Of a stretch of DNA of 64,000 nucleotides, positions 1 to 14,137 are shown in pieces (positions within the stretch are counted from its first letter, which is position 1; each line of letters begins with the position of its first letter). The notes beneath the pieces were generated by a model. The model worked only from the letters and a program-made list of their open reading frames with translations. It was not told the DNA's origin and ran no database searches. The position numbers were made by a program, and so were the translations under genes. The stretch spans positions 1-64,000 of the IMG/VR virus record IMGVR_UViG_3300035145_003993; one strand, 5' to 3'.

Positions 1-304
1 AGAATCACATGCAGGTCAAGTAGTTGAGTGCATCCCATCAGATGATGTAGTTTGTGAAGAAACCGTCGAAGAAACTGTTGAAGAAACTGTTGAAGAAACT
101 GTTGAAGGAGTAGAAGATGCAGGTCTTCCTGAAGAAGTAGAAGCTGGTGTAGAGGAATCTACTGAAGAACCTATTGAAGAAGTAGAAGCTGGTGTAGAGG
201 AATCTACTGAAGAACCTATTGAAGAAGTAGAAGCTGGTGATAATCAATCAGATTCTGGAGATCCAGAAATTGATCCTGCTCCTCAAGCTGGCGAGCCTGG
301 TTAA
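1..304 (+). CDS. 3' end of an acidic, repeat-rich protein (partial; missing from the ORF track)
   Basis: Frame 2 is open from nt 2 to TAA at 302-304: ESHAGQVVECIPSDDVVCEETVEETVEETVEETVEGVEDAGLPEEVEAGVEESTEEPIEEVEAGVEESTEEPIEEVEAGDNQSDSGDPEIDPAPQAGEPG*. Repeat units are multiples of 3. Confidence 0.85.
   Translation, partial: ESHAGQVVECIPSDDVVCEETVEETVEETVEETVEGVEDAGLPEEVEAGVEESTEEPIEEVEAGVEESTEEPIEEVEAGDNQSDSGDPEIDPAPQAGEPG
56..106 (+). repeat. 12-bp tandem repeat (GAAGAAACTGTT, about 4 copies, encodes EETV)
   Basis: Directly visible; the first copy is degenerate (gaagaaaccgtc). Confidence 0.9.
131..239 (+). repeat. 45-bp perfect tandem repeat, about 2.4 copies (EEVEAGVEESTEEPI)
   Basis: 131-175 is identical to 176-220, with a partial copy at 221-239. 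Confidence 0.95.
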
Positions 305-542
305 TATATTTTATTTTATTTTTGCGGTTTAACTGCTTAAATTTATATTCAATTTTTAAAGCGTTGGAGTGATCCAACGCTTTTTTTATATACACAAATC
401 GACATGGTCTTTTACTTCTCGTATATTTAGCTCCACCTTTAATAACACCATTATGCTGTTTTAATCTTCTTTCAAGATTTGTAGTTATACCGCAATAAAA
501 AGAATTGTCATTACAGATTAACACGTACATATACCATTTCAA
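216..542 (-). CDS. GIY-YIG nuclease, SLX1/UPF0213-like
   Basis: YMYVL..DNSFYCGITTNLERRLKQHN..GAKYTRSKRP..ALKIE motifs; TTG start with AGGAGG RBS at 550-555. Confidence 0.9.
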   Translation of the reverse strand: MKWYMYVLICNDNSFYCGITTNLERRLKQHNGVIKGGAKYTRSKRPCRFVYIKKALDHSNALKIEYKFKQLNRKNKIKYINQARQLEEQDQFLDLQNLIDYHQLLLLQ

Positions 543-560
543 AAGTTGTCCTCCTACATT

Positions 561-643
561 TTCTTCTCACTGAAGAAAGGGTGAAAATTCAGCAAGTCAA
601 ATGGCATTACTACACTTTTATATGTTGACACCCTTGTTCTTCA
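561..643 (-). promoter_or_regulatory. Putative structured RNA leader (nested inverted repeats) upstream of the GIY-YIG gene
   Basis: 571-583 TGAAGAAAGGGTG pairs with 629-643 CACCCTTGTTCTTCA (2-nt bulge). Inner pair GTCAA 596-600 / TTGAC 625-629. Alternative pair TTCTTC 561-566 / GAAGAA 572-577. Confidence 0.4.
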
Positions 644-682
644 CATATTATATAAAAGACATAGATAGGACCGACTAATTAA

Positions 683-1156
683 TTATACTATACTTAATAT
701 AACGTCTATAATACTTAAGTCGTAATTTTCATTTTCAACGTTAATATTACTGTCTTTTAGTGAGTGAAATACACTAAAGGCAAATTCTCTTCTATTTTTA
801 AATTGATCTATTCTTTTTGAATTTAAAATTTTATTAATTAATCTTTTTTCTTCAATAGAATTTGCTTTACAAAAGTCGTAAAGAGTTTCAATAACATTTT
901 TTTTATTGAAAACTGTATTGTTTGAAAATAAGTTTGCAGGTAAATGACGAAGAATTAAAAAAGGGTCTTCATCGTTATTTATTTGACATAAACACTTTTC
1001 TTTTTTGTGAAGAGAAATTGAATTGTTATCTGCAACTAAAGAAAATAATCCATCATCACTATTAGGCGACGCTATTTTCCATGTATTTTTATTTAAAGGA
1101 TCTTTCGTTATTTTATATCCTAAATGGTTTATTTGATTTATTAATTTTTCTATCAT
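683..1156 (-). CDS. hypothetical protein
   Basis: 157-aa ORF packed in the operon; no recognised motif. Confidence 0.75.
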   Translation of the reverse strand: MIEKLINQINHLGYKITKDPLNKNTWKIASPNSDDGLFSLVADNNSISLHKKEKCLCQINNDEDPFLILRHLPANLFSNNTVFNKKNVIETLYDFCKANSIEEKRLINKILNSKRIDQFKNRREFAFSVFHSLKDSNINVENENYDLSIIDVILSIV

Positions 1157-1164
1157 TATTAACT

Positions 1165-1695
1165 CTATTTAATTTTATAATATTTTTCTTTTGATATTGT
1201 AGGACTAAAAAATGTTAATCGATTTCCTTCGATATCTATGACTTCAAAAGAAGTGTCTCCCCAAGAATTGTCTTCAAGAGGACCTATTTGAATATTTTTT
1301 TTAGAAAACTTGTCATGTAATTTATGAACAGAACTAACTCTTAAAGACAAAGAAACATTGCCATAAAAGTTTTTGTTATACTTGTGAAAAGTTCCATTTT
1401 GGTTGTAAAGTTCAATAATGTTTCCTCCAATATCAAACATCGTTCCTTCACTTCCTTGACTTCTCCAATAGTGAACAACAGGAAACTCTAAAAACTTATT
1501 ATAAAACTTAACCATTTCTTCCATACTTTTGACATAAATATGAACTCTTACTTCTTTAGAATATGCATTCCAACTTTTTCCTAAATCTATATTTAATTCT
1601 TTTGCAGCATCAATAGCAGATTTAGAAGGTGCAGTTTTATTTTTGCTTGTCTTTTTAGAATTTTTATCATTTTGCTGATTGAAAAAACTTGTCAT
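1165..1695 (-). CDS. VOC (glyoxalase/bleomycin-resistance) family protein with basic N-terminal extension
   Basis: VHIYVKSMEEMVKFYNKFLEF..IIELY..LSLRVSSV..GPLEDNSWGDTSFEVIDIEGNRLTF is the typical paired beta-alpha-beta-beta-beta VOC pattern. Confidence 0.85.
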   Translation of the reverse strand: MTSFFNQQNDKNSKKTSKNKTAPSKSAIDAAKELNIDLGKSWNAYSKEVRVHIYVKSMEEMVKFYNKFLEFPVVHYWRSQGSEGTMFDIGGNIIELYNQNGTFHKYNKNFYGNVSLSLRVSSVHKLHDKFSKKNIQIGPLEDNSWGDTSFEVIDIEGNRLTFFSPTISKEKYYKIK

Positions 1696-1698
1696 TTA

Positions 1699-2091
1699 TT
1701 ATCTTCTTTCTCTTTTTTCCCCGCCTAAAGGATATTGTAACCACGCATAAGGTTTTCTATTATCAATATAATCTTCTAAATTATCACAGTTCCATGCTTC
1801 TTGTTCAAACCTAATAGATAAGTAAGACTCTCTAGAAAAGCCTTTTCTGCATATAATAGATGACCAAATATAATCAAATAAATATATAATTAAAAAACCA
1901 ATAAAAAATAATTCCTTGTATTGTAAATAATGAATTGTTTCGTGTCTTTTAGTTTTTTCTTCTAAAGTTCCTCGACAAAATATCCAAGGCCCTAAAGTTA
2001 TTGCCCAAATATCAATTGGAGCAAATTTACTTAAAATAACTGGAATTTTACTGTTTTCATAAAATTTTGGGTATTTCACTTTATTTTTCAC
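1699..2091 (-). CDS. small HExxH zincin-like protein (DUF4157-like) with a hydrophobic segment
   Basis: AITLGP..RHETIHYLQ..FEQEAW; GTG start. Confidence 0.7.
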   Translation of the reverse strand: MKNKVKYPKFYENSKIPVILSKFAPIDIWAITLGPWIFCRGTLEEKTKRHETIHYLQYKELFFIGFLIIYLFDYIWSSIICRKGFSRESYLSIRFEQEAWNCDNLEDYIDNRKPYAWLQYPLGGEKRERR

Positions 2092-2287
2092 TTAAATCAT
2101 CAATATCTTCAGTTGGTTGTGGATTTTCACCTTCAAGGTCTTCATCTTTAGGAGGATTACCTTCAGGGGGCATTTCTTCTGGGTCAGTCATTGTTTTTCT
2201 AGATTCATCATTAAGTGAACTTTCTTCGTTACCTTCATTGATAAATCTTCTCCAAGCTTCCATAATTAGTTTTGTATCATTGTTCAT
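2081..2287 (-). CDS. small acidic protein, candidate internal head protein
   Basis: ATG at 2287 is preferred over TTG at 2299. MNNDTKLIMEAWRRFINE is followed by a disordered E/D/P tail; TATAATTA lies upstream. Confidence 0.65.
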   Translation of the reverse strand: MNNDTKLIMEAWRRFINEGNEESSLNDESRKTMTDPEEMPPEGNPPKDEDLEGENPQPTEDIDDLSEK

Positions 2288-2313
2288 AGTAAATCTCAAC
2301 TTAAATTATATTA

Positions 2314-2433: not shown

Positions 2434-4242
2434 TTAGATAATGTTCATATCAAGACATGTTACTGTACCGTAGAAATCAGCACGTACCATCTTCTTACCG
2501 TAACGAGTCATAACACCCTTACGTGGTGTGAAATCCTCTGGCTGGAAGATTGTAGGTGTAACGATCAATGGAACGTATGGAGCATAAACGAAACCAGTCT
2601 CTAGGTAAGAACCACCCTTATAACCAACAAGGATCTTGTTGCGTGGGAAGTATGGGTCTTTGTAAACTGTGAAACGATTACTTAGTGTACCAACTTTGTC
2701 TGCACCCATTGTGAAAGGAGCACCAACTTGACCATCACCATCAATGCTATAGCTTGGACGATAAAGAACAGAAGCTTCAAGGATTGTTGCAACATCAGGA
2801 GAAACTACGATGAAGTTAGCAGAACCACGAAGTGTCTTTCTGTGAATCTCATTAGCAACGTCAATAACAGTCTCAGTTAGAGTCTCATACCACTCACGAA
2901 CAGTACCAGTAAATGCTGGTCCAGGATTAAGTGTAGATGTACGCGCGATCTCAGCACCAGTACGCTTGTTAACAAACTTACCAGGTGAACGACTCCAGAA
3001 GAAGTTAGCACCTTGTGCACCATTTAGAAGATCTCCAAGAATCTCACGATCGATTTCAAGAGCGATTTGCTCAGAAAGAATCTGAGTAAGCTCAACCTCT
3101 GCATCCATTGAGTGGTATGCATTAAGGTCTTGTGCAAGCTCTGGACTCCAACGTGCTCTCAACTTGCGTGTTTGTGCTGTTACAGGGATTGACTCAATCT
3201 TAATATCAATCTCTGGAATTGCAGAAGGAGCATCAGTTGTTAGTAATGTCTGACCTTCCATTGCTGGATCAACATCTACACCACCAACACTATTTGCAAT
3301 ACCTTCAGCACCATCAGCTTCAACAAATTCAACAATGATACCATCAACATTACCACCATCAATTGTGAGTGCAGCAGTTGCAGGTACTGTAGCGTGAATC
3401 TGAACTAGGAAAAGAGCTCGATCTTGTACACCATTTGCATTAAGAGCACCAGCTTTGAAAGTTGCTAAAGTATCGCCAGTACCAACTTTAGTAACTTTTC
3501 TTACGTTGTGAGATAAACCACCTTGCAATTTTTGTGCCGCTGAAATTTGAACAGATTGAGCTGTTCCACCGTCATCCATAACTGCAGTTGCAGACTTAAT
3601 AAGAGAAAGATCAGCACCTGAAAGTTGAGTTGCATCTAACAATACAAATTGAAATGCTGATGTTGCTGCTGCGTCAATAACTTCTGAATCGTAATCGACT
3701 AGTGCAAGGTGAGTAGCATCAGTTGGATCAAATTTAGCAGTTGCTTGTACATTGCCATGTGCAACTGTTTCTGTTTTGTGCTCGCGAGAAAAACCGCTAC
3801 CTGCAAGATCATATTGACCACCAAGAGCATCAGCCCCACCTTGAATAGCCTTACCAGTAGGACCACCATAGATTGACTCAGTTGTTTGGTGAGGACCCTC
3901 TTGTGAACCGTATGTATAATCTAGATAAAATAGAAGACCACTTGGAAGACTCATTGGTTGAATTGAAACTAGTTCATTTGCAATAAGACCACCGAATACG
4001 CGACGAACGATTGGGAATGCAATGTTTGAGAAACCACCAACATCACCAGCATTCATTGTGCTGCTTTCGCGAAGAACTTGAGCAGCTTGATTCTCAAGAA
4101 GAGTAGCCATATTTTCGCGGTTTACATCATCCATACCACGAAGAAGACCAGTGCGAGACCATTTCTCAACGAGGCGCTTGTTTTGTTGGCCCACGTGGCG
4201 GTCTCTAATACCTTCAGTTAACTTTTGTAGTGTAAAACTCAT
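2434..4242 (-). CDS. gp23: major capsid protein, T4 gp23-like
   Basis: LVEKW..LLENQ, FPIVRRVF..ELVSIQPM..PSGLLFY, TRKLRARWSPELAQDLNAYH..DAEVELT..LSEQIALEIDREI, GFVYAPYVPL, FTPRKGVMTRY; AAGGA RBS. Confidence 0.98.
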   Translation of the reverse strand: MSFTLQKLTEGIRDRHVGQQNKRLVEKWSRTGLLRGMDDVNRENMATLLENQAAQVLRESSTMNAGDVGGFSNIAFPIVRRVFGGLIANELVSIQPMSLPSGLLFYLDYTYGSQEGPHQTTESIYGGPTGKAIQGGADALGGQYDLAGSGFSREHKTETVAHGNVQATAKFDPTDATHLALVDYDSEVIDAAATSAFQFVLLDATQLSGADLSLIKSATAVMDDGGTAQSVQISAAQKLQGGLSHNVRKVTKVGTGDTLATFKAGALNANGVQDRALFLVQIHATVPATAALTIDGGNVDGIIVEFVEADGAEGIANSVGGVDVDPAMEGQTLLTTDAPSAIPEIDIKIESIPVTAQTRKLRARWSPELAQDLNAYHSMDAEVELTQILSEQIALEIDREILGDLLNGAQGANFFWSRSPGKFVNKRTGAEIARTSTLNPGPAFTGTVREWYETLTETVIDVANEIHRKTLRGSANFIVVSPDVATILEASVLYRPSYSIDGDGQVGAPFTMGADKVGTLSNRFTVYKDPYFPRNKILVGYKGGSYLETGFVYAPYVPLIVTPTIFQPEDFTPRKGVMTRYGKKMVRADFYGTVTCLDMNII

Positions 4243-4282: not shown

Positions 4283-5800
4283 TTATTTTCTAATACCAGC
4301 AAGAGTTGCCCAACGATCAAGTGCTACAGATTCGTTAATTGGCTTTGCTTGACCACTACGAACTGAGTTTGAAGAAGAACTAGAAGATCTTCTTAGTGCA
4401 CCTTCAGATAGGTTACTATTACGGGATGCCTTACTACTTACAAGCGACTTTGAAAGACTTTCAAATAGAATCTTAGCCTCACCAATAGTCTTTGCTTCAT
4501 CAAGAGATTCAACAATGTTGCGTTGTTGCTTCATTGACAAATCACGATTTTGCATGAGTTTGTTAGCATAAAGTAACTTCGCGTTGAATAGGTTCATTTC
4601 TGAAAGATGAGTCTTCATTCCTTGAAGAGCCTCTTTGTATTGAGAAAGCTTGCTTTCTAGCATACGATTCGTGCGTACAACTTTTGCAGCTTTAGTTTTC
4701 ATCTCTTGAAGCTTGTCTACACCATCAACAAAAGCTTCACCTTCTTCAGAACCACCACCAAATTGTGAAGCTATATCTTTAGCTTCACCTTCACGAAGAG
4801 ATTTCATTCTACCAATCTCTCTTCTAAGCATATTTTCATCAATTTCTAAAACACGGTCAAAAGACTCAGCTATTTCTTCTGGGCCATCTTTAACTTCATC
4901 TTCATCTTCATCTAAGTGAGTTCCTTCATAAGCTTCTTTTTGCTCATGATCATCCTCAAACAAACCTTCAAGATTAAGTTCTTGTTGGCCAACATCTTCG
5001 TCTTCTTCTACAAGACCTGCCATGATAGCTAATTCTCTAACTGTCGTAAGATCTGTAACTTCGTCACCAGATTCTTCAGCTTCTTCAACTTCTTCAGCTT
5101 CTACTTCAGATTCTTCCTCATTTTCAGGTTTAGGATCTTCATCAGCAGCTAAAAGATCTGCGTCATCGTCTTCTTTTACTTCGTCAGCTTCGAAAAGATC
5201 AATCTCTAGGAGATCGTCAAAGCTTTCGTTAAGATACTTTTTGTTTGAGTGTCTACTAGACATATTCTCTAACTCCTTATTTAATTTATAAAATTCTTCT
5301 AAAAGTTCTTTGTTATTTCTAATTATACCGTTTTTGTTCAATTTTGCTATTTCATTAACTAAATTCTTATATAATACTATAATTCTAGGTTTATTTACGC
5401 TATATTTATCTGAACTTTCTGAAAGAATTATAGCTTTTTGTAAAGAGTTAATACTTTCTTTCAAATCAGATATTTTTTGTTTTGCAGCTTGAATTCTAGA
5501 ATTTTGACTAATTAATTTATTAAGAATTCTTCTAGATTCTTGATTAAGCTCAACAGGTTTTGAATCTTCTTGTTCAGTTTGTTCTTCTTTGACTTCATCT
5601 TGAGATTCTTCTTTAATAGATTCATATGAGCAATCATCTTGACTTGTTAATTCTTCATCTGATTCAAAAAGTTTTTTCTCTACCATAATTTTAATTTGTG
5701 GTGAAATAGACTCAATTATTTGTTGTTTTACTTTTTCTTCAGCAGATAACTTTATTTGTTCTGCTGCTTCAATTGCTTCGTTATATAATGTACTACTCAT
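4283..5800 (-). CDS. gp22: prohead core/scaffolding protein, gp22-like
   Basis: Immediately upstream of the major capsid gene; highly acidic coiled coil with many L/I-x-E sites; LSEMNLFNAKLLYANKL; C-terminus DRWATLAGIRK. Confidence 0.8.
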   Translation of the reverse strand: MSSTLYNEAIEAAEQIKLSAEEKVKQQIIESISPQIKIMVEKKLFESDEELTSQDDCSYESIKEESQDEVKEEQTEQEDSKPVELNQESRRILNKLISQNSRIQAAKQKISDLKESINSLQKAIILSESSDKYSVNKPRIIVLYKNLVNEIAKLNKNGIIRNNKELLEEFYKLNKELENMSSRHSNKKYLNESFDDLLEIDLFEADEVKEDDDADLLAADEDPKPENEEESEVEAEEVEEAEESGDEVTDLTTVRELAIMAGLVEEDEDVGQQELNLEGLFEDDHEQKEAYEGTHLDEDEDEVKDGPEEIAESFDRVLEIDENMLRREIGRMKSLREGEAKDIASQFGGGSEEGEAFVDGVDKLQEMKTKAAKVVRTNRMLESKLSQYKEALQGMKTHLSEMNLFNAKLLYANKLMQNRDLSMKQQRNIVESLDEAKTIGEAKILFESLSKSLVSSKASRNSNLSEGALRRSSSSSSNSVRSGQAKPINESVALDRWATLAGIRK

Positions 5801-5812
5801 ATTTAAAACCTG

Positions 5813-5820
5813 TATTTATA
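5813..5820 (-). promoter_or_regulatory. T4-type late promoter TATAAATA upstream of scaffold/capsid genes
   Basis: Exact T4 late consensus in the 33-bp gap. It lies only 12 nt from the ATG, so the leader would be very short. Confidence 0.4.
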
Positions 5821-5833
5821 TAATTTATATATT

Positions 5834-6709
5834 CTATAATTTTTTATTTTTGTTTAAAACATTATATTTATCATTAAAATTTTGATTTGTTGTTTGTAAC
5901 AATATATCAAAAGATGATAAATCTTCGTCATAAAAATCATCAATAAGTATTTCTGAGGATGAAGATTTAACAGTTTCTGCACCGTCAGTTGTACCTTTCA
6001 TTGGAACTTTAACATGTCCATGAGGAGTTTTAATATAAACATTGATTTCTTCTTGATCATGTCCTTTATAATTAAAACCATGTCTACCTTTAGGGAGATG
6101 GCCAACAGGAGCAGCATCTGCTGTATTTGTTGATACATTCATGTTTTTATAAATACTATCTTTTCCAGTAGATCTAACAACAATATTACCACTAATTTGG
6201 TTACCTCTTTCAGACAATATTAATTCTTCAATATATTCCTTAAGACTGTTTTCTAACAATTTGTTTCCTTTAACTTCGTAACCGGCTGATAATCCTATTA
6301 CACCTGCAATACTATTTCCTAAACCACCTAAACTTGAAATGTCTGTTCCTCTATGTGCTAAGGAATCTGTTGCTCTTCTTTGAAAAGATGTATGAGCTTT
6401 TGACTCAATATCTGCATCTAATTCATCATATGGATTGTCTGCTTCAGTTTCTATTAGACCTGCTAAAATTGCTAATTCTCTAACTGTTGTATTAGAAGTT
6501 ATTTGTATTATTTCTTGTTTGTCTTCTGGAATTTCATAATCATATTCTCCTTTTGGAGAACTTAATGCATCACCCATATTCCAGTTTCTACCAATACCAC
6601 TATTAGGATCACCACCTAAAGACCCTATACTTAAACCTGTCCTACTGTCATAATTAAATGATCCACCGAATGAGTTAGGATTTGAATTAGAAAAAGTAGG
6701 ACTAGTCAT
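5834..6709 (-). CDS. hypothetical head-module protein sharing the TTVRELAIxAGLxE motif with the scaffold
   Basis: 291-aa ORF with AAGGA RBS; motif is 12/14 aa identical to the scaffold copy. Confidence 0.8.
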   Translation of the reverse strand: MTSPTFSNSNPNSFGGSFNYDSRTGLSIGSLGGDPNSGIGRNWNMGDALSSPKGEYDYEIPEDKQEIIQITSNTTVRELAILAGLIETEADNPYDELDADIESKAHTSFQRRATDSLAHRGTDISSLGGLGNSIAGVIGLSAGYEVKGNKLLENSLKEYIEELILSERGNQISGNIVVRSTGKDSIYKNMNVSTNTADAAPVGHLPKGRHGFNYKGHDQEEINVYIKTPHGHVKVPMKGTTDGAETVKSSSSEILIDDFYDEDLSSFDILLQTTNQNFNDKYNVLNKNKKL

Positions 6710-6718
6710 TTAAATTCC

Positions 6719-7288
6719 TTAAGGTTGCTTATAGTCAATATTCGGATCTTCAGATGGACTCTTTGCTTCGCCTAAAATTGGTAAAGAAACAGATGTATCA
6801 TTACCAGAAGAATTATAGTGTCGACTAAAATATGTTCCTATTGTTGAGGCTGGACTTAAAGGTTCATTACGATCATCTCTCCAACCAAAACCTTTATTTT
6901 GTCTATCTTCAGGAATTGTAGCTTGATTTTCAGTAGGTGCTGATAGGTTGTTAATGTCAGGTGAAATTAGATTAGGGCCTTTTTTATTAGGTTGGTCTTT
7001 AGCGTTTTGTAAATCATCAAACATACTTTCAGAACCACTATGAGTAAAATCTAGATGAGGAACAAAATCAGGATTTCCTAATTCAGATCTTAAATCTAAT
7101 TCTTTCATTGTATCTGTTGAAGCTTCTAAAACTTCTTGACTTCTATCAGGAAAAACAGACTGACTAGTGTAAACGCCCATTTCGCTAATACTACCACCTT
7201 TATAGGCTTCTCTTTGTCTTTTTATTTGTTCATTAAATGACGTAGCATTAACGAAATCATTAGCTCCTGATTTTCTATATCCAGCCAT
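6719..7288 (-). CDS. hypothetical head-module protein (polar, Pro-rich)
   Basis: 189-aa ORF with AAGGA RBS. Confidence 0.8.
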   Translation of the reverse strand: MAGYRKSGANDFVNATSFNEQIKRQREAYKGGSISEMGVYTSQSVFPDRSQEVLEASTDTMKELDLRSELGNPDFVPHLDFTHSGSESMFDDLQNAKDQPNKKGPNLISPDINNLSAPTENQATIPEDRQNKGFGWRDDRNEPLSPASTIGTYFSRHYNSSGNDTSVSLPILGEAKSPSEDPNIDYKQP

Positions 7289-7319
7289 AATAAAATCCTT
7301 TCAGAAATAAAATATGATA

Positions 7320-7607
7320 TTATATACCTTTAATTATTCTTCTTCTAAGTTCTTTTTTAACTTCTTGAAGTCTTTTTAGTTCTTCAATCATTTTTGATTC
7401 TTTAATTTTACAAGCTTGATAATAATTCATGCATTTCGAAAGAGAATCAGCAAGATCAGATGCTTCAACCTCTTTGACTTTTTTAATAACTTGTGATGGA
7501 TGTGAAGCTTTTAACTCTAAAGTTTCATTCATACGTTGTCTTTCTTCACTCACCATTTCTTTAATAAGTTCAGGTGTAACCTTAATAACTTTATCTGTAT
7601 TAGACAT
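7320..7607 (-). CDS. hypothetical coiled-coil head-module protein
   Basis: 95 aa with GGAG RBS; N-terminal KVTPELIKEMVSEERQRMNE helix. Confidence 0.8.
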   Translation of the reverse strand: MSNTDKVIKVTPELIKEMVSEERQRMNETLELKASHPSQVIKKVKEVEASDLADSLSKCMNYYQACKIKESKMIEELKRLQEVKKELRRRIIKGI

Positions 7608-7643
7608 AATTTATCTCCATATAATACTAAATTTTATATTACA

Positions 7644-7651
7644 TAATTATA
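7644..7651 (-). promoter_or_regulatory. putative late promoter TATAATTA
   Basis: Recurrent intergenic octamer. Confidence 0.4.
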
Positions 7652-7691
7652 TCTATATGAGTAAAATTTAAATTGTTTTTAATTTAATATT

Positions 7692-8117
7692 TTATTTCTC
7701 AGAAAAAGCTAAGTTTGCCCATTTGTCTGCTGAACCTGAAAACATCTCCATAGGATCAGACTCGTTTACAACTTGACTATATGTATCAGATGGTTTTGCT
7801 GTAAATTGATTTGGTCTATCAGCACCATTTTGCTCTTGTAAAGTTGTTTTTGCAGTATCTTGAAGAATTGATGCCATTATTGGATCACTTGTTGTTTGAG
7901 ATATTATTTTATTTGTATTGTCTTCAAATTTTTCGTTTACTATTTTTTTAGATATTTGTGAAGACATTGTATCTTGTTTAAAATTATTTGCAGAATTTGT
8001 TGAAATAAGACTTTCATTTAATGAAGATGTATCTCCACCACTAAGACCTTCAGCTAACAGTTCTACTAAACACTCTTTTACAATGCTCTTAAGCATACTT
8101 CTACTTACTTTTGCCAT
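7692..8117 (-). CDS. hypothetical head-module protein with a scaffold-like C-terminus
   Basis: N-terminus MAKVSRSMLKSIVKECLVELLAE; C-terminus DKWANLAFSEK resembles scaffold DRWATLAGIRK. Confidence 0.8.
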   Translation of the reverse strand: MAKVSRSMLKSIVKECLVELLAEGLSGGDTSSLNESLISTNSANNFKQDTMSSQISKKIVNEKFEDNTNKIISQTTSDPIMASILQDTAKTTLQEQNGADRPNQFTAKPSDTYSQVVNESDPMEMFSGSADKWANLAFSEK

Positions 8118-8122
8118 ATTAA

Positions 8123-8671
8123 TTAATCACCTAAAAATGTTTCTACAACTTCTGTAAATTCTGATCTGTCGATTGATGTTAATCCTACAATTATTTTTCC
8201 ATTTTGTTTTGTATCAAAATATAGATTTGTACATCTTATTTCAAGTTGACTAGAACTAGAAGTAAATGTTAAAAAATTATCTAAAAGAATATCAGTTCTT
8301 GAAAAGGCTACATCTATACCATCACCTGTTGGTAAAAATTGAATCCATCTAGATATTTTTGGTAGTTTTAAAGTTTTTACTTCAACCAAGGTAAAACCTG
8401 CTTTTAAATTGTTTGCCTTTTTTTCGCTATCTTGAATTACTCCATCACCGCTAGTATCAGTAAATATATCTGTATCTGGAACAACACCATGTGTATGAAC
8501 AAAACCATTATTTGTCTCTGAGTGTCCTACAACAGCAGAATTATCATTTTTTTTGACAAAAAATGTACTAACTAGATCTGATGAAAGATCTACGACATAC
8601 GGTATAGAACTAATTTGGTATTCTGGAGTAAAATTATGACCTACTGATCTTGGGATATGAGATATCGACAT
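8123..8671 (-). CDS. beta-rich hypothetical protein, tandem paralogue B (possible capsid decoration protein)
   Basis: MSISHIPRSVGHNFTPEYQISSIPY...GLTSIDRSEFTEVVETFL; paralogous to the next gene. Confidence 0.8.
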   Translation of the reverse strand: MSISHIPRSVGHNFTPEYQISSIPYVVDLSSDLVSTFFVKKNDNSAVVGHSETNNGFVHTHGVVPDTDIFTDTSGDGVIQDSEKKANNLKAGFTLVEVKTLKLPKISRWIQFLPTGDGIDVAFSRTDILLDNFLTFTSSSSQLEIRCTNLYFDTKQNGKIIVGLTSIDRSEFTEVVETFLGD

Positions 8672-9084
8672 TAAGGTTGTCCTTCCAAGAATGTTTCTAC
8701 TACAGAAGTAAATTCTGATCTGTCTATAGCTGTTAGACCTGCTAATATTTCTAACGTTTTCCCATCATCAACATCGTTAAAATATAAATTAACACATCTA
8801 ATATGTAAAGGATATGTCCTATTCGTATCTAAAGTCATCCCATTACTACCAGCTGCAGCGTCTTTAGCACTAAAATAAACGGAAAGAATAGCATCAGCTT
8901 TAAATTGAAGCCACTGTGTTATTTTAGGAAATTCAACAACATAAACTGTACTACCGTTTACAGTTAAAGGAGAATTATTGTCATAGGTATTAATCACACC
9001 ATCTCTTGTATAAGGAATAGCACTAATTTGATATTCAGGTAAAAAATTATGACCTACTGATCTTGGAATATGTGATATTGCCAT
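8671..9084 (-). CDS. beta-rich hypothetical protein, tandem paralogue A
   Basis: Start at ATG 9084 (TAATG overlap with the gp21 stop) aligns with the paralogue: MAISHIPRSVGHNFLPEYQISAIPY...GLTAIDRSEFTSVVETFL. Confidence 0.8.
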   Translation of the reverse strand: MAISHIPRSVGHNFLPEYQISAIPYTRDGVINTYDNNSPLTVNGSTVYVVEFPKITQWLQFKADAILSVYFSAKDAAAGSNGMTLDTNRTYPLHIRCVNLYFNDVDDGKTLEILAGLTAIDRSEFTSVVETFLEGQP

Positions 9085-9686
9085 TATTTCCACTCCATTA
9101 TGTCATTAAATATTCTATCTATTCTGTCTGTTTTGTTAAATACGTTATTTATAAACTGGGGAGAAACTTCTTTTCCTTCTTTCATCATAAACGCACCAGG
9201 AGTTGAAGGCTCACTTACAAAATCCCAACAAATAAGTTGAAAATCATCTTGTACAATTTGCATATCACCTTGAATTTTTGTACTTCCAACGCCTCTAGAA
9301 GAAATTCCTAATGTTACTCCACTTTCAACTAATGATTGTAATATTTTTCCACTAGGAGTATTAAGAATTTCAACTACACCATAGACAATATTACCTTCCA
9401 TATACGCTTGTTTAATATTATGTGAAGCATTTTTTAATTCAACAACAGAAGAATCTGGATGGTCTAGTTCACCTAAAGCTCTATTTTCTTTAATAAACTT
9501 TTGATAATTTCTTATTTCTCTTTCTAGAATATTCCTTGGATAAACTCTTCCATTCTGATTTAAAGTTTCAGCTTTTTGTAAAATACCTTTCATGATTAAA
9601 GGCTTACCTAGATCTTTTTGTTCTTTAATTAATTTAGGATCGTATTCAAAATTAACCCATTCTGTAATAAGTCTTTGAGCACCCAT
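9084..9686 (-). CDS. gp21: prohead protease, T4 gp21-like
   Basis: GILQKAETLNQNGRVYP, ALGELDHP, ASHNI, TPSGKIL, LGISSRGVGS, DFVSEPSTPGA. Confidence 0.97.
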   Translation of the reverse strand: MGAQRLITEWVNFEYDPKLIKEQKDLGKPLIMKGILQKAETLNQNGRVYPRNILEREIRNYQKFIKENRALGELDHPDSSVVELKNASHNIKQAYMEGNIVYGVVEILNTPSGKILQSLVESGVTLGISSRGVGSTKIQGDMQIVQDDFQLICWDFVSEPSTPGAFMMKEGKEVSPQFINNVFNKTDRIDRIFNDIMEWK

Positions 9687-9687
9687 T

Positions 9688-10518
9688 TTATTCTCCTGAT
9701 ATTTCTTCTTTTAATTTTCCGATTGTTAAAAATCTTTGAAGATTTTCTTTTGACATATCATTACAATCTAAATCTTTAATGTTATTAACAACAAAGCTAT
9801 ATTTTTCATTTAAAATTTGATTGTTACAATCACTAATATAATTTTCAAGAATATTAATACAAGATATTTTTATTGCATTATATTTATTTGAAAGAGAATC
9901 TTCATTGTCTTTTATAAAAAAAGATATCATTTCTCTTTGCGATTCATTTAATTTAGAGTTATATTTTTTCTCAAACATTTCATTCATAATCTTATATGTA
10001 AGAGAATCAACTTTTTTTGGAATAATATTTTCTTTTATTAATTCTTTTTTACTAGTTAAGCTTTCATGTAATTTAATTTCATATTCAGTTACTTTGTCAA
10101 AACTTGGATTTTTATTTCTCCATTCATTCAACAAAGTCTGAATTGTTGCATATGTTCTATAATTTTTAATTTTTCCTTCGAAAATATTGCCTTTTCCAAA
10201 AGTATAGTTTAAGTCTTTAATTAAAAAGGATTTTTCTTCTTCTAATTTTTTATTATCAAACATATGATTACAAGCTTTTTTAGCTTCATTAATAATTGAA
10301 GTAGCTAAAGTTTCTGAAACATTGGAAGTTTCAGAAAGAGCTTTAAAAAGTTTATATTCTTTAAATAATTGTGTATCTTGCTTAAAATTTTTCTTTATTA
10401 TATTAATTGCAAGTTCGGCGCTTTTTTTATCATCTTCCATTAGTCTTTCACAAACAAAGTTTATAATTTGTTCATATATTATACCAATGTTTCTTTTTTT
10501 ATTATGATTCTTCGCCAT
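9688..10518 (-). CDS. helical head-assembly protein between portal and protease (prohead-core position)
   Basis: Probable start ATG 10518 (MAKNHNKKRNIG). It occupies the slot of T4 gp67/gp68 and carries several L/I-x-E sites. Confidence 0.75.
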   Translation of the reverse strand: MAKNHNKKRNIGIIYEQIINFVCERLMEDDKKSAELAINIIKKNFKQDTQLFKEYKLFKALSETSNVSETLATSIINEAKKACNHMFDNKKLEEEKSFLIKDLNYTFGKGNIFEGKIKNYRTYATIQTLLNEWRNKNPSFDKVTEYEIKLHESLTSKKELIKENIIPKKVDSLTYKIMNEMFEKKYNSKLNESQREMISFFIKDNEDSLSNKYNAIKISCINILENYISDCNNQILNEKYSFVVNNIKDLDCNDMSKENLQRFLTIGKLKEEISGE

Positions 10519-12499
10519 TGTTATCTTCCTTGTTTTCAAACATATCATCGTCTATAATTATATCAAAATCTTTGTCATTATTTTCTTTTAATAACTTATT
10601 TTTACTTAAATTTAAAGAATTAGACATTTTTTCTAAATCTTTTGACATTCTATAAGAAAGTTGTCTATCTACAAAATCATTAATTAAAGGACTTTGTGGA
10701 AGAATATTATCTGATAGTGAAGATCTAAAAACATCTTCAGAATTTGCTATTTTTATAGGCTTATTTATTCCACTACCTGATGATAAACCTGGTAAAGTTG
10801 TTTGTGACTTTCCTTTTTTTGATCCTTTTCTTTTAAATTTCCCTCTAGTTTTAGAAACTTTAGAATCAGCTTGGACAGGGTTTTCTTTATCTGGATCAAA
10901 AATATCTTTAGAGTCAAATTCTATTAAGTCATCAAACTCAGATAGATCTTTTTCTGTCATTATATTATTACCTTTTATTTCTCCTGAAAATAGATCTGAA
11001 ACAGGAGATTCATCTTCAACATCTGGGGCAGATGCTCCAGATCCAATGTCACCAGAAGACTGATCTGAGTCATCACCAAATATATCATCTTCAGTTTCTG
11101 GTAATTGTAAACCTTCAAGCTCCATTTCTCGGATTTTATCTTTTTCTCTTCCCATTTCAATTCTTGTAATTTCATCATCATTTAAATCAAGAATATGTTT
11201 TCTAATCCATTCTCTATCAACAAAACCTTCAGGAGCTCCTCCTGCTATTTCAAATTTGGTTCTTATTAACTCCAGTTTTTGTTGTTGAGCAATACTTGAT
11301 GGATTACATAATTTTAATTCAAAGTCTAATATAGATTCATCTGTATATCCGTGTGAATATAAATGAATCATTGCAATTTTATTTAATTCTGAAACTATTG
11401 TTTTTTGTATTCTTTGAATTGTTCTACTAAATCTAACATCTTCTTGAGCTAATGTAGCTTTTGATCCAATATCTTCATCATATCCAAGATATGCTTTTGG
11501 AATTTTAAGAGCTGCAAAAAGTTTCTTTTGAATATATTCAACATCTTCAATAGCTGTTGTATTTGATCCACCAGCCAAAGTATCAATTCTAGTTCCACTT
11601 TCTCCACCTCTTACTGGAAGGAAATAATCTTCATCAACTGATAGTGGATTATATCTTAAATCAACTTGTCCAGTATTTTTATCTACAACAGCATTTCTTT
11701 TTAAAGAAGATTGAGCTTGTTCAAGATAATCGGAAATATTTTCTGGAGGAATATTACCAACATCAATATAAAAAACTCTTCTTTCTGGAGATCTAATTAC
11801 TCTATATACAAGCATTGCATCTTCAATAAGAATTAGCTGACGCCAGACTCTTCGAGCACCTTCTAAAACAGAAGATCCATATGGTAAAAAAGCATCACTT
11901 CCTAAAAGTCTAAAATGAGACACTTGCCAATTTTCTAAAACCCTATTTCCTTGAGTTACCCATCTAAATCTTACAGCCCCTGGATCATTTGGATCAAAAC
12001 CTTCTTCTCTTTCTATTTCTGATATTGGTATTGGAAAAACGTTAACGACACCAAATTCAGGATGAATATCATTAAAAAGAAAAAAGTCTCCATATTTACA
12101 TAAATTTCTAACCCACATAGAAAGATTAAAATCTATATTAAGCGTATCATAAAATAATTCATCTAATATTTTTTTAATCATTCTATTTTCAGAGTAAATA
12201 TTTAAAATATTACCTTCTACATCAGGTGAAGCACATTCTTCAGAGTATATATCTAAAGCAGAAGAAATCTCTGGAGTTCCTTCCATCTCTGAAAAATCAG
12301 AATATCTTGACATTCTATCATATGATCCATAGGCTCTTAAAGTACTATTGTAAACATCACTATGTGCTTTTTTAAATACTTCTAAAGAAGATTTAGAGTA
12401 AGACTCTTTATCTTGTATCTTTTTAATTCTTCTTTTAACTACAGGACCTGATCTAAAAAGGTCTGTTAATTTTTTAAATAAATTATTATTTTCTGCCAT
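10502..12499 (-). CDS. gp20: portal protein, T4 gp20-like, with long charged C-terminal extension
   Basis: PEISSALDIYSEE, QLILIEDAMLVYRVIRSPERRVFYIDVGNIP, EDYFLPVRGGESGTRIDTLAGG, IEDVEYIQKKLFAALKIP. Confidence 0.97.
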   Translation of the reverse strand: MAENNNLFKKLTDLFRSGPVVKRRIKKIQDKESYSKSSLEVFKKAHSDVYNSTLRAYGSYDRMSRYSDFSEMEGTPEISSALDIYSEECASPDVEGNILNIYSENRMIKKILDELFYDTLNIDFNLSMWVRNLCKYGDFFLFNDIHPEFGVVNVFPIPISEIEREEGFDPNDPGAVRFRWVTQGNRVLENWQVSHFRLLGSDAFLPYGSSVLEGARRVWRQLILIEDAMLVYRVIRSPERRVFYIDVGNIPPENISDYLEQAQSSLKRNAVVDKNTGQVDLRYNPLSVDEDYFLPVRGGESGTRIDTLAGGSNTTAIEDVEYIQKKLFAALKIPKAYLGYDEDIGSKATLAQEDVRFSRTIQRIQKTIVSELNKIAMIHLYSHGYTDESILDFELKLCNPSSIAQQQKLELIRTKFEIAGGAPEGFVDREWIRKHILDLNDDEITRIEMGREKDKIREMELEGLQLPETEDDIFGDDSDQSSGDIGSGASAPDVEDESPVSDLFSGEIKGNNIMTEKDLSEFDDLIEFDSKDIFDPDKENPVQADSKVSKTRGKFKRKGSKKGKSQTTLPGLSSGSGINKPIKIANSEDVFRSSLSDNILPQSPLINDFVDRQLSYRMSKDLEKMSNSLNLSKNKLLKENNDKDFDIIIDDDMFENKEDNNGEES

Positions 12500-12502
12500 G
12501 TT

Positions 12503-14137
12503 TTATTTTCCTACTAACCAACTAAGATCTCCAAAAGGATTATTTTTTGTTGGTTTATTATTTTTTTTACCACTAAAATTATTTTGTGGCATAAAAACAG
12601 GTACAAAAGGATTCACACTGTTTTGTTTATTATTATAAAAAGGAGAAACAGCAGTGTTACTAATATTTGTATTATTTACTTCCATTCCTTTTAAAATAGC
12701 ATCTGCTTGCTGCATTTGAGTAACATTATAAGTATTCGAATTACTATCTGCTAACCAGCATCCTATAGCTAAAGACATAATTAAGTCGTCATTATAACCT
12801 TTCATTGCAGTTATTTTTTTACCATTCCAGATAAAAGTTTTTAATTCTGAATATAGTCTTTGTGAATATGACTTAATTCTTCCGTTTCTTAAACTTTCTT
12901 CAAGGTTAGCTAATATTTTATCTCTACTCTCTTTAGAAGTAGTAAATCCAGCTTTAGCTATATTATTTGCATCTCCGTACAAATATTGATACTTTTCTTT
13001 TTCTTTTGAAAAGTATATATTTTTATAACCTAATTCTGCTAATTTAACTAGCATTGTATATCCATACGCATTATTTTCAGGACAAACCATAGCATTATAA
13101 AATCTTTTAGATATGTCATATACTAAAGATGCAAATTGATCAGGTGGTATTTTTCCTTTAAATTCGCAAGCAATTGACATATCTTTGTTATTAATAACAT
13201 GGAATGCTGAATAGTCTCCACTATCACCACGTGCAATATCGCATGACATAGTATAAGTAACAGATTCAATTGGATATTCCCAATACCAAACATTGTTTCC
13301 GGGCCCGCTTTTTTCAATCGGACTCTTTGTTAGAACTCTTAAATTTTCTAAAACGTCATTAGATAAAAAAGTATCACCTGAAGATGCGAAGTCACATAAA
13401 AGCTCTTGAGAAACCTGCTTTTTAGACATATTTTTAGTTTCTTTATCAAACCAATCATCGTCTCTTTCCGGGTGAACATCCCACATTAACTTAATAGGAT
13501 TAAATTTATTTTCTTTTCTTTCAGCCTTTGTATATATTTCATGATATTGTCCACCAACACCATTAGGTGTTGATAACAAAATAGCACGTCCACCTGTTGA
13601 TAGTGTAGGATAAAGACCCATCCATAATTCGTCAAAATTTCTTACAAAAGCAGCCTCGTCTACAATTAACAAAGAAAGAGCTTCAGAACGACCTGCATCT
13701 TCAGATGTAGGTACAGCTTTAATTTGTGATCCATTTGAGAATTCAACTTGTTGCTTGTTATTAGCAGTGATTACTGGAACTAATAACCATTTAGGCATTG
13801 ATTTTATATACGTTTTTACTTTTCTAATAAAGTTTTGTGCAACTGCTAATTTAGTAGCAATAATAAGAATGTTTTTTTCTTTATAAAAAACTGCTTGCCA
13901 AACAGCATAAGCAGCAACTAATGTTGACAATCCTAACTGACGAGATTTTAAAATAATGTTAAATCTATGATCATTAAAATCTTTTACACAATCATCTTGA
14001 AAAGGAAAAGTATTAAATCTAATTAATCCTTTTAAAGGGTGTTGGATTTTAAGGTATCTATTCATAAAATAAACTGGGTCTTTACCACATTTAATTATTT
14101 CTGAAATTTGACCATTTTTTGATTTAACATTAGCCAT
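12503..14137 (-). CDS. gp17: terminase large subunit, T4 gp17-like
   Basis: CGKDPVYF, Walker A KSRQLGLST, Walker B LLIVDEAAF, STPNG, nuclease DIARGDSGDYS and NDDLIMS. Confidence 0.97.
   Translation of the reverse strand: MANVKSKNGQISEIIKCGKDPVYFMNRYLKIQHPLKGLIRFNTFPFQDDCVKDFNDHRFNIILKSRQLGLSTLVAAYAVWQAVFYKEKNILIIATKLAVAQNFIRKVKTYIKSMPKWLLVPVITANNKQQVEFSNGSQIKAVPTSEDAGRSEALSLLIVDEAAFVRNFDELWMGLYPTLSTGGRAILLSTPNGVGGQYHEIYTKAERKENKFNPIKLMWDVHPERDDDWFDKETKNMSKKQVSQELLCDFASSGDTFLSNDVLENLRVLTKSPIEKSGPGNNVWYWEYPIESVTYTMSCDIARGDSGDYSAFHVINNKDMSIACEFKGKIPPDQFASLVYDISKRFYNAMVCPENNAYGYTMLVKLAELGYKNIYFSKEKEKYQYLYGDANNIAKAGFTTSKESRDKILANLEESLRNGRIKSYSQRLYSELKTFIWNGKKITAMKGYNDDLIMSLAIGCWLADSNSNTYNVTQMQQADAILKGMEVNNTNISNTAVSPFYNNKQNSVNPFVPVFMPQNNFSGKKNNKPTKNNPFGDLSWLVGK

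What the first reader, a model, noticed from the sequence alone, without database searches (positions are those of the whole stretch)
4283..7730. Orphan protein mimics the scaffold C-terminus
Seen: the scaffold ends ALDRWATLAGIRK* and the 7692..8117 protein ends SADKWANLAFSEK*. Both follow D-[RK]-W-A-x-L-A at the same distance from the stop. Known: in P22 and other HK97-fold systems the scaffold C-terminal helix binds the coat protein, and encapsulin cargo uses terminal loading peptides. Inference: 7692..8117 is a second mini-scaffold or cargo adaptor with an N-terminal tag and a C-terminal coat-binding helix.
Basis: partly seen in the sequence, partly recalled or inferred. Interest (0 to 1): 0.65.

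Follow-up and report, generated by a model that had tools for sequence, protein, structure and literature searches.

The report
Scaffold-like tail on small head-core protein
A small, widely conserved, mostly disordered protein in the head-assembly genes of a marine T4-like phage ends in a short helix resembling the scaffold's own tail, a tail that in sister phages is also attached to unrelated proteins and so looks like a natural capsid-loading tag.

Summary
Both proteins end as quoted, and W-A-x-L-A occurs only twice in the 211-kb genome. Both ends are conserved in about 95 syntenic metagenomic loci, down to 34% identity.

Three details do not hold. The 141-aa protein (p141) is not an orphan: it has 425 homologues. 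The D-[RK] prefix and the equal distance to the stop are not conserved.

The window holds a T4-type head module: TerL, gp20 portal, S77 protease, scaffold and Gp23 coat. p141 has three conserved helices joined by variable linkers:
- an N-terminal helix ending in L-x-E, the T4 protease site type;
- a central helix ending in L-Q-E;
- the C-terminal W-A-x-L-A-F helix.

The scaffold tail, R-W-x-x-L-A-G-[IL], also ends five mutually unrelated protein families in sister phages. It therefore behaves as a portable tag. p141's tail is a private variant sharing only W, L and A; a profile of the canonical tails does not recognise it.

Best reading: p141 is a protease-processed prohead-core accessory protein that docks through its terminal helices. 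Coat binding was not shown, because the co-fold gave no verdict. The kind is known (scaffold or cargo C-terminal docking peptides), but this variant is new.

The parts
2434..4242 (-). Major capsid protein, Gp23 type, 602 aa
   Evidence: Pfam PF07068 E 5e-80, PHROG 138
4066..4242 (-). Coat N-terminal propeptide, residues 1-59. It is highly conserved and ends at the predicted maturation site L57-x-E59.
   Evidence: Invariant columns in 47 coats. The site is inferred from the T4 L/I-x-E rule (PMC9026906).
4283..5800 (-). Scaffold (gp22 analogue), 505 aa: all-helical with disordered acidic stretches
   Evidence: It lies between the protease and the coat. [LI]xE density is 4.8 per 100 residues against a genome mean of 1.4. 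AF2 gives long helices plus disordered segments. Homology to T4 gp22 is not significant.
4286..4339 (-). Scaffold C-terminal tail, residues 488-505: a Ser-rich linker, then the helix R-W-A-T-L-A-G-I
   Evidence: Invariant in orthologues. Helix 490-500 follows disordered 456-488. It scores 27.1 bits, rank 1 of 265, against a profile of cargo tails.
5006..5047 (-). Internal scaffold motif (L-A-x-M-A-G-L followed by an L-x-E site), shared with the 291-aa protein
   Evidence: Present only in the close subclade.
5834..6709 (-). 291-aa head-module protein of unknown function. It carries the same internal motif at 6449-6490.
   Evidence: Syntenic orthologues. The DNA patch is about 30 of 35 bases identical to the scaffold's.
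6719..7288 (-). 189-aa head-module protein, unknown function
   Evidence: Syntenic orthologues; no family hit
7320..7607 (-). 95-aa head-module protein, rich in [LI]xE (4.2 per 100)
7692..8117 (-). p141, the small protein of the finding
   Evidence: 425 homologues; syntenic in about 100 loci; no Pfam or PHROG family
8049..8117 (-). p141 N-terminal helix and tag, residues 1-23, with invariant L17-x-E19 and L21-x-E23
   Evidence: The same type of helix starts four other proteins of the genome.
7830..7892 (-). p141 central conserved block, residues 76-96, ending in invariant L93-Q-E95
   Evidence: Weak resemblance to coat propeptide residues 45-59.
7695..7742 (-). p141 C-terminal tail, residues 126-141: F126, then the helix W133-A-x-L136-A137-F138
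   Evidence: F126, W133, A137 and F138 are invariant and L136 nearly so in 61 sequences. Helix 129-138. The tail type is private to p141 orthologues.
8123..9093 (-). Two tandem paralogues (182 and 140 aa) between the protease and p141
9084..9686 (-). Prohead protease, gp21 / S77 type
   Evidence: Pfam PF03420 E 1e-28, PHROG 207 E 6e-50
9688..10548 (-). 286-aa protein between portal and protease, rich in [LI]xE (4.5 per 100); likely another core protein
   Evidence: It shares an N-terminal stretch with immuto gp073, seen by eye only.
10502..12499 (-). Portal, gp20 type
   Evidence: Pfam PF07230 E 5e-77
12503..14137 (-). Terminase large subunit
   Evidence: Pfam PF03237 E 4e-17

Best explanation
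p141 is a conserved, largely disordered accessory protein of a T4-type prohead core. It consists of three short conserved helices on variable linkers.

- The N-terminal helix is a cleavable tag of the kind that starts other small, probably packaged, proteins of this phage.
- The central helix carries a further protease site.
- The C-terminal helix, W-A-x-L-A-F, is a diverged relative of the scaffold's terminal docking helix.

The scaffold helix, R-W-x-x-L-A-G-[IL], behaves as a portable module in this phage group. Placed after a flexible linker at the C-terminus, it most likely docks its bearer to the inner face of the shell, either on the coat or its propeptide or on the core itself. p141 would be co-assembled into the core by its two ends and then cut at its L-x-E sites by the S77 protease.

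Shown: the gene context, the conservation, the helices, the portability of the canonical tail, and the site pattern.
Inferred: docking, the receptor, cleavage, and that p141's variant tail uses the same receptor.
For: - Head-module identity.
- p141 is conserved and syntenic.
- Conservation is concentrated in three blocks. The commonest-residue fraction is 0.81, 0.65 and 0.65 in the blocks, against 0.32 and 0.45 in the linkers.
- Of 22 invariant columns, six form L-x-E sites. T4 gp21 cuts after L/I-x-E (PMC9026906).
- AF2 puts helices at 6-26, 64-99 and 129-138 of p141. In the scaffold it puts helix 490-500 after a disordered linker.
- The canonical tail ends five mutually unrelated families in sister genomes: a P-loop family, a ParB-like family, the L135/L143/L141 family, L118 and L129. 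Between families, only the last 13-30 residues match.
- The pattern with the preceding R gave 13 hits against 0 for the reversed control in five of the sister genomes.
- In half of those proteins (7 of 14) an [LI]xE site lies directly before R-W, so the tail would be clipped off.
- Several of them also begin with an N-terminal helix ending in [LI]xE, the same two-ended layout as p141.
- Precedent: the 80alpha scaffold and CpmB share a C-terminal helix-and-hook that binds one site on the coat (PMC5644958).
Against: - No binding was shown; the co-fold gave no verdict.
- p141's tail lacks three of the six canonical positions. It scores -4.1 bits, rank 38 of 265, against the canonical-tail profile.
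- The W-x-x-L-A-F form is never found on any other protein, so it may have its own receptor.
- The window genome and its closest complete relative carry no canonical-tail cargo. The portability evidence comes from more distant sisters.
- The family has no detectable homology to T4 gp67, gp68 or gp22.
- No expression or virion proteomic data were examined.
Confidence: 0.5

Rival explanations
1. p141 is a core or assembly protein, but its tail is only superficially like the scaffold's. The W-A-x-L-A-F helix binds another partner (protease, portal, the scaffold body or a vertex protein), and the shared W, L and A reflect convergence of amphipathic helices.
For: - Canonical invariants R, G and [IL] are absent and the profile rank is 38 of 265.
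- G versus F is fixed in each family across about 95 loci.
- The p141 tail type is private.
- hhalign finds no homology between the two families.
Against: - The same near-C-terminal position after a flexible linker.
- W, A(+1), L(+3) and A(+4) are shared at the level of family consensus.
- They are the only two such proteins in the genome, and both lie in the head module.
Confidence: 0.3
2. p141 is mainly a regulator or decoy substrate of the prohead protease, comparable in role to T4 Inh. Its central helix imitates the coat's maturation site, so it occupies or times the protease.
For: - The central block, residues 81-95, matches coat propeptide residues 45-59 in register and ends in L-x-E.
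- That match is the only local hit of hhalign between the two families (E 0.052).
- The derived pattern hits only these two proteins in the genome.
- T4 encodes a head protein annotated as an inhibitor of the protease (feature table).
Against: The match is weak (probability 1%) and the pattern was derived post hoc. Many core proteins carry L-x-E sites. This reading does not explain the conserved tail.
Confidence: 0.12
3. The terminal helices are membrane-targeting amphipathic helices that hold assembling cores at the inner membrane, where T4 proheads form.
For: They are short C-terminal amphipathic helices after flexible linkers. T4 proheads assemble on the membrane (PMC9958956).
Against: Invariance of W, A and G over deep divergence is far stricter than membrane helices need. 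The tails are short and charged at the end.
Confidence: 0.04
4. The resemblance is chance and carries no shared function.
For: Twelve protein pairs in the genome reach 6 of 13 flush identities.
Against: None of 2000 shuffles reproduce two W-A-x-L-A tails. Both motifs are under strong purifying selection.
Confidence: 0.04

Closest known systems
Phage 80alpha scaffold and SaPI1 CpmB (shared C-terminal helix-and-hook)
   Same: A small protein unrelated to the scaffold carries a scaffold-like C-terminal helix. In 80alpha both bind one site by the coat N-arm (PMC5644958).
   Different: CpmB belongs to a satellite and resizes the capsid, whereas p141 is the phage's own conserved gene. The motif sequence differs (the hook is R-I-I-K). 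Binding is not shown here.
T4 prohead core: gp22, gp67, gp68, internal proteins and their N-terminal capsid targeting sequence
   Same: Same module (gp20, gp21, gp22 analogue, gp23). Small core proteins are cut at L/I-x-E. There is an N-terminal tag ending at a cleavage site.
   Different: No homology to gp67 or gp68. The T4 tag is about 10 residues and N-terminal. No C-terminal tag shared with the scaffold turned up for T4 in the papers read. The reviews call core localisation 'mysterious'.
Encapsulin cargo-loading peptides
   Same: A short conserved C-terminal peptide after a flexible linker, portable among unrelated cargo, in an HK97-fold shell.
   Different: This is a tailed phage with a separate scaffold that bears the same peptide. 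The motif sequence is different, and many tails are preceded by a protease site. This comparison rests on my own knowledge.
Herpesvirus protease and scaffold, and lambda C/Nu3, which share a C-terminus
   Same: Two core proteins share the tail that ties them to the coat. This comparison rests on my own knowledge.
   Different: There the sharing comes from nested, in-frame genes. Here the genes are separate and unrelated.

Membership tests
T4-type prohead assembly module | Gp23-type coat, gp20-type portal and S77 (gp21) protease encoded together | tested here: met
   Pfam and PHROG hits
T4-type prohead assembly module | Scaffold homologous to gp22 | tested here: inconclusive
   hhalign against T4 gp22 is not significant. 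Position, helical and acidic architecture and [LI]xE richness all fit.
T4 gp68 / gp67 core proteins | Sequence homology | tested here: not met
   hhalign of the p141 family against gp68 gave probability 0.6%. gp67 was not compared; it is a short acidic protein.
T4-like capsid targeting sequence | N-terminal peptide ending at an L/I-x-E site that directs packaging and is removed | tested here: inconclusive
   A conserved N-terminal helix with L-x-E at residues 19 and 23. Like helices start four other proteins with their site at residue 18-19. Targeting and cleavage are not testable here.
Canonical portable tail R-W-x-x-L-A-G-[IL] of this phage group | R at -1, W, L at +3, A at +4, G at +5 and I/L at +6, near the C-terminus | tested here: not met
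   p141 has W, L and A only and scores -4.1 bits, rank 38 of 265. The scaffold meets all six positions (27.1 bits).
Scaffold-tail mimic of the 80alpha/CpmB kind | The second protein binds the same coat site as the scaffold tail | tested here: inconclusive
   The co-fold gave no verdict. It needs experiment.
Encapsulin-like cargo-loading peptide | Portable among unrelated cargo proteins | tested here: met
   Met for the canonical tail in sister genomes: five unrelated families. Not met for p141's own variant, which is private.

The most novel reading that the evidence does not exclude
A clade of marine T4-like phages uses one short C-terminal peptide, R-W-x-x-L-A-G-[IL], both as the scaffold's docking end and as a natural loading tag. 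The tag is often protease-removable and is grafted onto unrelated enzymes-to-be-packaged (a P-loop protein, ParB-like proteins and others). p141 is a tag-only protein that links core and shell. This would be a phage counterpart of encapsulin cargo loading, and a concrete answer to how proteins are localised to a T4-type core.
Probability: 0.4. Interest if true: 0.75.

Novelty: new variant of a known kind. Interest (0 to 1): 0.6.

Why it matters
T4 reviews still call it 'mysterious' how proteins are placed in the scaffolding core of T4-type heads. A short, sequence-defined C-terminal tail shared by the scaffold and by unrelated proteins gives a directly testable docking signal. The same signal could serve as a handle for loading foreign proteins into large phage capsids. 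It also identifies candidate packaged (and possibly injected) proteins in abundant, uncultured marine phages. For p141 itself the gain is smaller: an uncharacterised but widespread family receives a plausible role.

Tried and rejected
- Co-fold of the coat (alignment A3) with p141 residues 96-141 (A4): score 0.00, no verdict. It counts neither for nor against binding.
- Family scans of p141 in Pfam and PHROGs: nothing.
- tblastn of p141 against cultured phages: nothing.
- Atlas look-alikes: only hypothetical viral clusters.
- hhalign of p141 against the scaffold family, T4 gp68 and the coat: no homology beyond short motifs. p141 is therefore not a scaffold fragment or duplicate.
- DNA of the two tails is only 21 of 42 bases identical, so this is not a recent copy.
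- Cargo-like proteins: no Pfam or PDB sequence match. 'P-loop' and 'ParB-like' rest on motifs read by eye.
- immuto, RM378 and LR756508 carry the W-tail on no protein other than, at most, the scaffold.
- Homologues of one N-tagged protein are too few (3) to test tag conservation.
- Covariation between tail and coat was not attempted because the motifs barely vary.
It was redone from stored files.
- The reads tools and the large representative search were not used.
Full report
**Context**

The window is the first 64 kb of a single 211,364-bp virus contig of 27% G+C. Its minus strand carries a T4-type head module:
- terminase large subunit, 12503-14137;
- gp20-type portal, 10502-12499;
- a 286-aa protein;
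- S77/gp21-type prohead protease, 9084-9686;
- two paralogues of 140 and 182 aa;
- p141, 7692-8117;
- proteins of 95, 189 and 291 aa;
- a 505-aa scaffold, 4283-5800;
- a 602-aa Gp23-type coat, 2434-4242.

The nearest cultured or deposited relatives of the coat are a 484-kb metagenomic phage, Rhodothermus phage RM378, Microcystis phage Mel-JY01 and Flavobacterium phage immuto (33-44% identity).

**The observation**

- W-A-x-L-A occurs nowhere else in the genome.
- 0.003 proteins would be expected to carry it in their last 15 residues, and no shuffle out of 2000 gave two.
- As a plain 13-residue comparison the pair is not unique: 12 of 34,980 pairs reach six identities. The single-genome match alone would be weak.

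**Conservation**

p141 is not an orphan. It has 425 homologues in marine metagenomes and sits in the same gene order in about 100 IMG/VR loci.
- Down to 34% identity, the scaffold keeps R-W-[AQS]-x-L-A-G-[IL] followed by 0-6 residues.
- p141 keeps [NK]-W-[AES]-x-L-A-F followed by 1-10 residues.
- The D-[RK] prefix and the equal spacing to the stop are peculiar to this genome.
- G versus F at position +5 is fixed in each family.
- Profile comparison finds no homology between the two families, and the tail DNA is only half identical. What is shared is a short motif, not a copied domain.

**Anatomy of p141**

Conservation is confined to three blocks: residues 1-26, 64-99 and 122-141. The linkers are free to vary.
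- AlphaFold2 on 61 sequences gives helices 6-26, 64-75, 79-99 and 129-138, with low confidence between them.
- Six of the 22 invariant columns form three L-x-E triplets, ending at E19, E23 and E95. T4 gp21, the founding S77 protease, cuts after L/I-x-E (PMC9026906).
- The scaffold has 4.8 such triplets per 100 residues against a genome mean of 1.4. It is predicted as long helices, disordered acidic stretches, and a Ser-rich disordered linker before a terminal helix at 490-500.
- Both tails are therefore short helices on flexible tethers, the usual form of a docking peptide.

**The N-terminal tag**

The pattern of p141's first helix occurs ten times in the proteome, seven of them within the first 30 residues. 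Four other small proteins begin with a closely similar helix whose [LI]xE site falls at residue 18-19. They lie outside the window, at genome coordinates 84884-85237, 86883-87380, 87490-87951 and 159774-160148. This resembles a longer version of the T4 capsid targeting sequence.

**The scaffold tail is portable**

First I scanned the ORFs of the fetched loci. Then I searched ten sister genomes with a degenerate DNA pattern. Both scans found the canonical tail at the C-terminus of non-scaffold proteins:
- a family with a Walker-A motif, encoded just after the coat gene;
- a family with a D-G-H-H-R motif of ParB type;
- a third family (L135, L143, L141);
- two single proteins (L118, L129).

All-against-all BLAST shows that these families share nothing but their last 13-30 residues. 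With the preceding R included, the pattern gave 13 hits against 0 for the reversed control. Seven of the ten sister genomes hold at least one such protein. The window genome and its closest complete relative hold none.

In half of these proteins (7 of 14) an [LI]xE triplet directly precedes R-W, so the protease would free the protein from its tail. Several also start with an N-terminal helix ending in [LI]xE. One ParB-like member carries the motif internally, followed by an L-x-E site.

The same kind of tail ends the scaffolds of immuto (a canonical W form) and, in weaker forms, those of RM378, the 484-kb phage and perhaps T4 gp22. The element is therefore old.

**Where p141 stands**

A profile built only from the non-scaffold tails puts the window scaffold first of 265 proteins, at 27.1 bits. 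It scores p141's tail at -4.1 bits in register, rank 38. p141 shares W, L(+3) and A(+4) with the canonical tail, and A(+1) with the scaffolds. It lacks R(-1), G(+5) and [IL](+6). Its W-x-x-L-A-F form is found on no other protein in five sister genomes. It is a private, strongly conserved variant. Whether it uses the same receptor remains open.

**Mechanism**

The canonical tail is most simply read as a docking peptide for the prohead interior. By analogy with P22, 80alpha/CpmB, herpesviruses and encapsulins, the receptor would be the coat's inner face or its very conserved propeptide. A site on the scaffold body is the alternative, since T4 internal proteins co-purify with gp22.

p141 has a tag at each end and no globular domain. 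It would be built into the core as a tether or filler and then cut up. The one co-fold allowed gave no verdict, so docking remains an inference.

**Verdict**

The kind of element is known, and the variant is new. The broader lead, a portable tail, is more interesting than p141 itself.

Noticed in passing
G000 84884-87951 and 159774-160148 (outside the window; loci L104, L105): A cluster of small genes whose products begin with nearly the same 18-19-residue helix ending in [LI]xE, like p141. They are possibly internal head proteins. A 281-aa neighbour (86041-86886) has the second-best canonical-tail score in the genome, 11.4 bits.
   Followed up: partly
window 5006-5047 and 6449-6490: The scaffold and the 291-aa protein share a 14-residue internal motif (L-A-x-[LM]-A-G-L, then an L-x-E site). 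The DNA is about 30 of 35 bases identical, which suggests a recent patch transfer. It is present only in the closest subclade.
   Followed up: partly
window 7830-7892 versus 4066-4110: p141 residues 81-95 resemble coat propeptide residues 45-59 in register, both ending in L-x-E. This is the only hhalign local hit between the families (E 0.052). The match is weak and was noticed post hoc.
   Followed up: partly
window 4141-4176 (coat residues 23-34): The invariant K-W helix of the coat propeptide scores 8.1 bits against the canonical-tail profile, fifth best of all positions in the proteome. The T4 gp23 propeptide, as I recall its sequence (not fetched here), has a similar K-W stretch. The meaning is unknown.
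   Followed up: no
window 8123-9093: Tandem paralogues of 182 and 140 aa share a conserved N-terminus and C-terminal part. One or two copies occur in all related loci. There is only a weak PHROG tail-fibre hit.
   Followed up: no
L024 8092-9333 (Flavobacterium phage immuto gp067): It is annotated 'DNA polymerase phi-like protein' but is the scaffold by position. It matches the window scaffold's C-terminal domain and has the canonical W tail.
   Followed up: partly
L026 (T4 gp21 and gp22 C-termini): Both end with an aromatic-x-x-[LV]-A pattern, faintly like the W-x-x-L-A tail. This is only a lead.
   Followed up: no
window 1-2300: Downstream of the coat gene lie a GIY-YIG nuclease ORF (216-542) and a glyoxalase-fold ORF (1165-1695). 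An acidic tandem-repeat ORF runs off the contig start (2-304).
   Followed up: partly
window composition: The coat region and 54-64 kb have 35-39% G+C, against 20-26% over most of 14-54 kb.
   Followed up: no
sister genomes G001-G005, loci L109, L110, L112, L114, L115, L117, L121, L123, L127: A W-F-A-P-A-G motif recurs inside long ORFs at one or two places in each genome, in the same conserved local context; where there are two they lie 3-4 kb apart. It is not a tail and the proteins were not identified.
   Followed up: no
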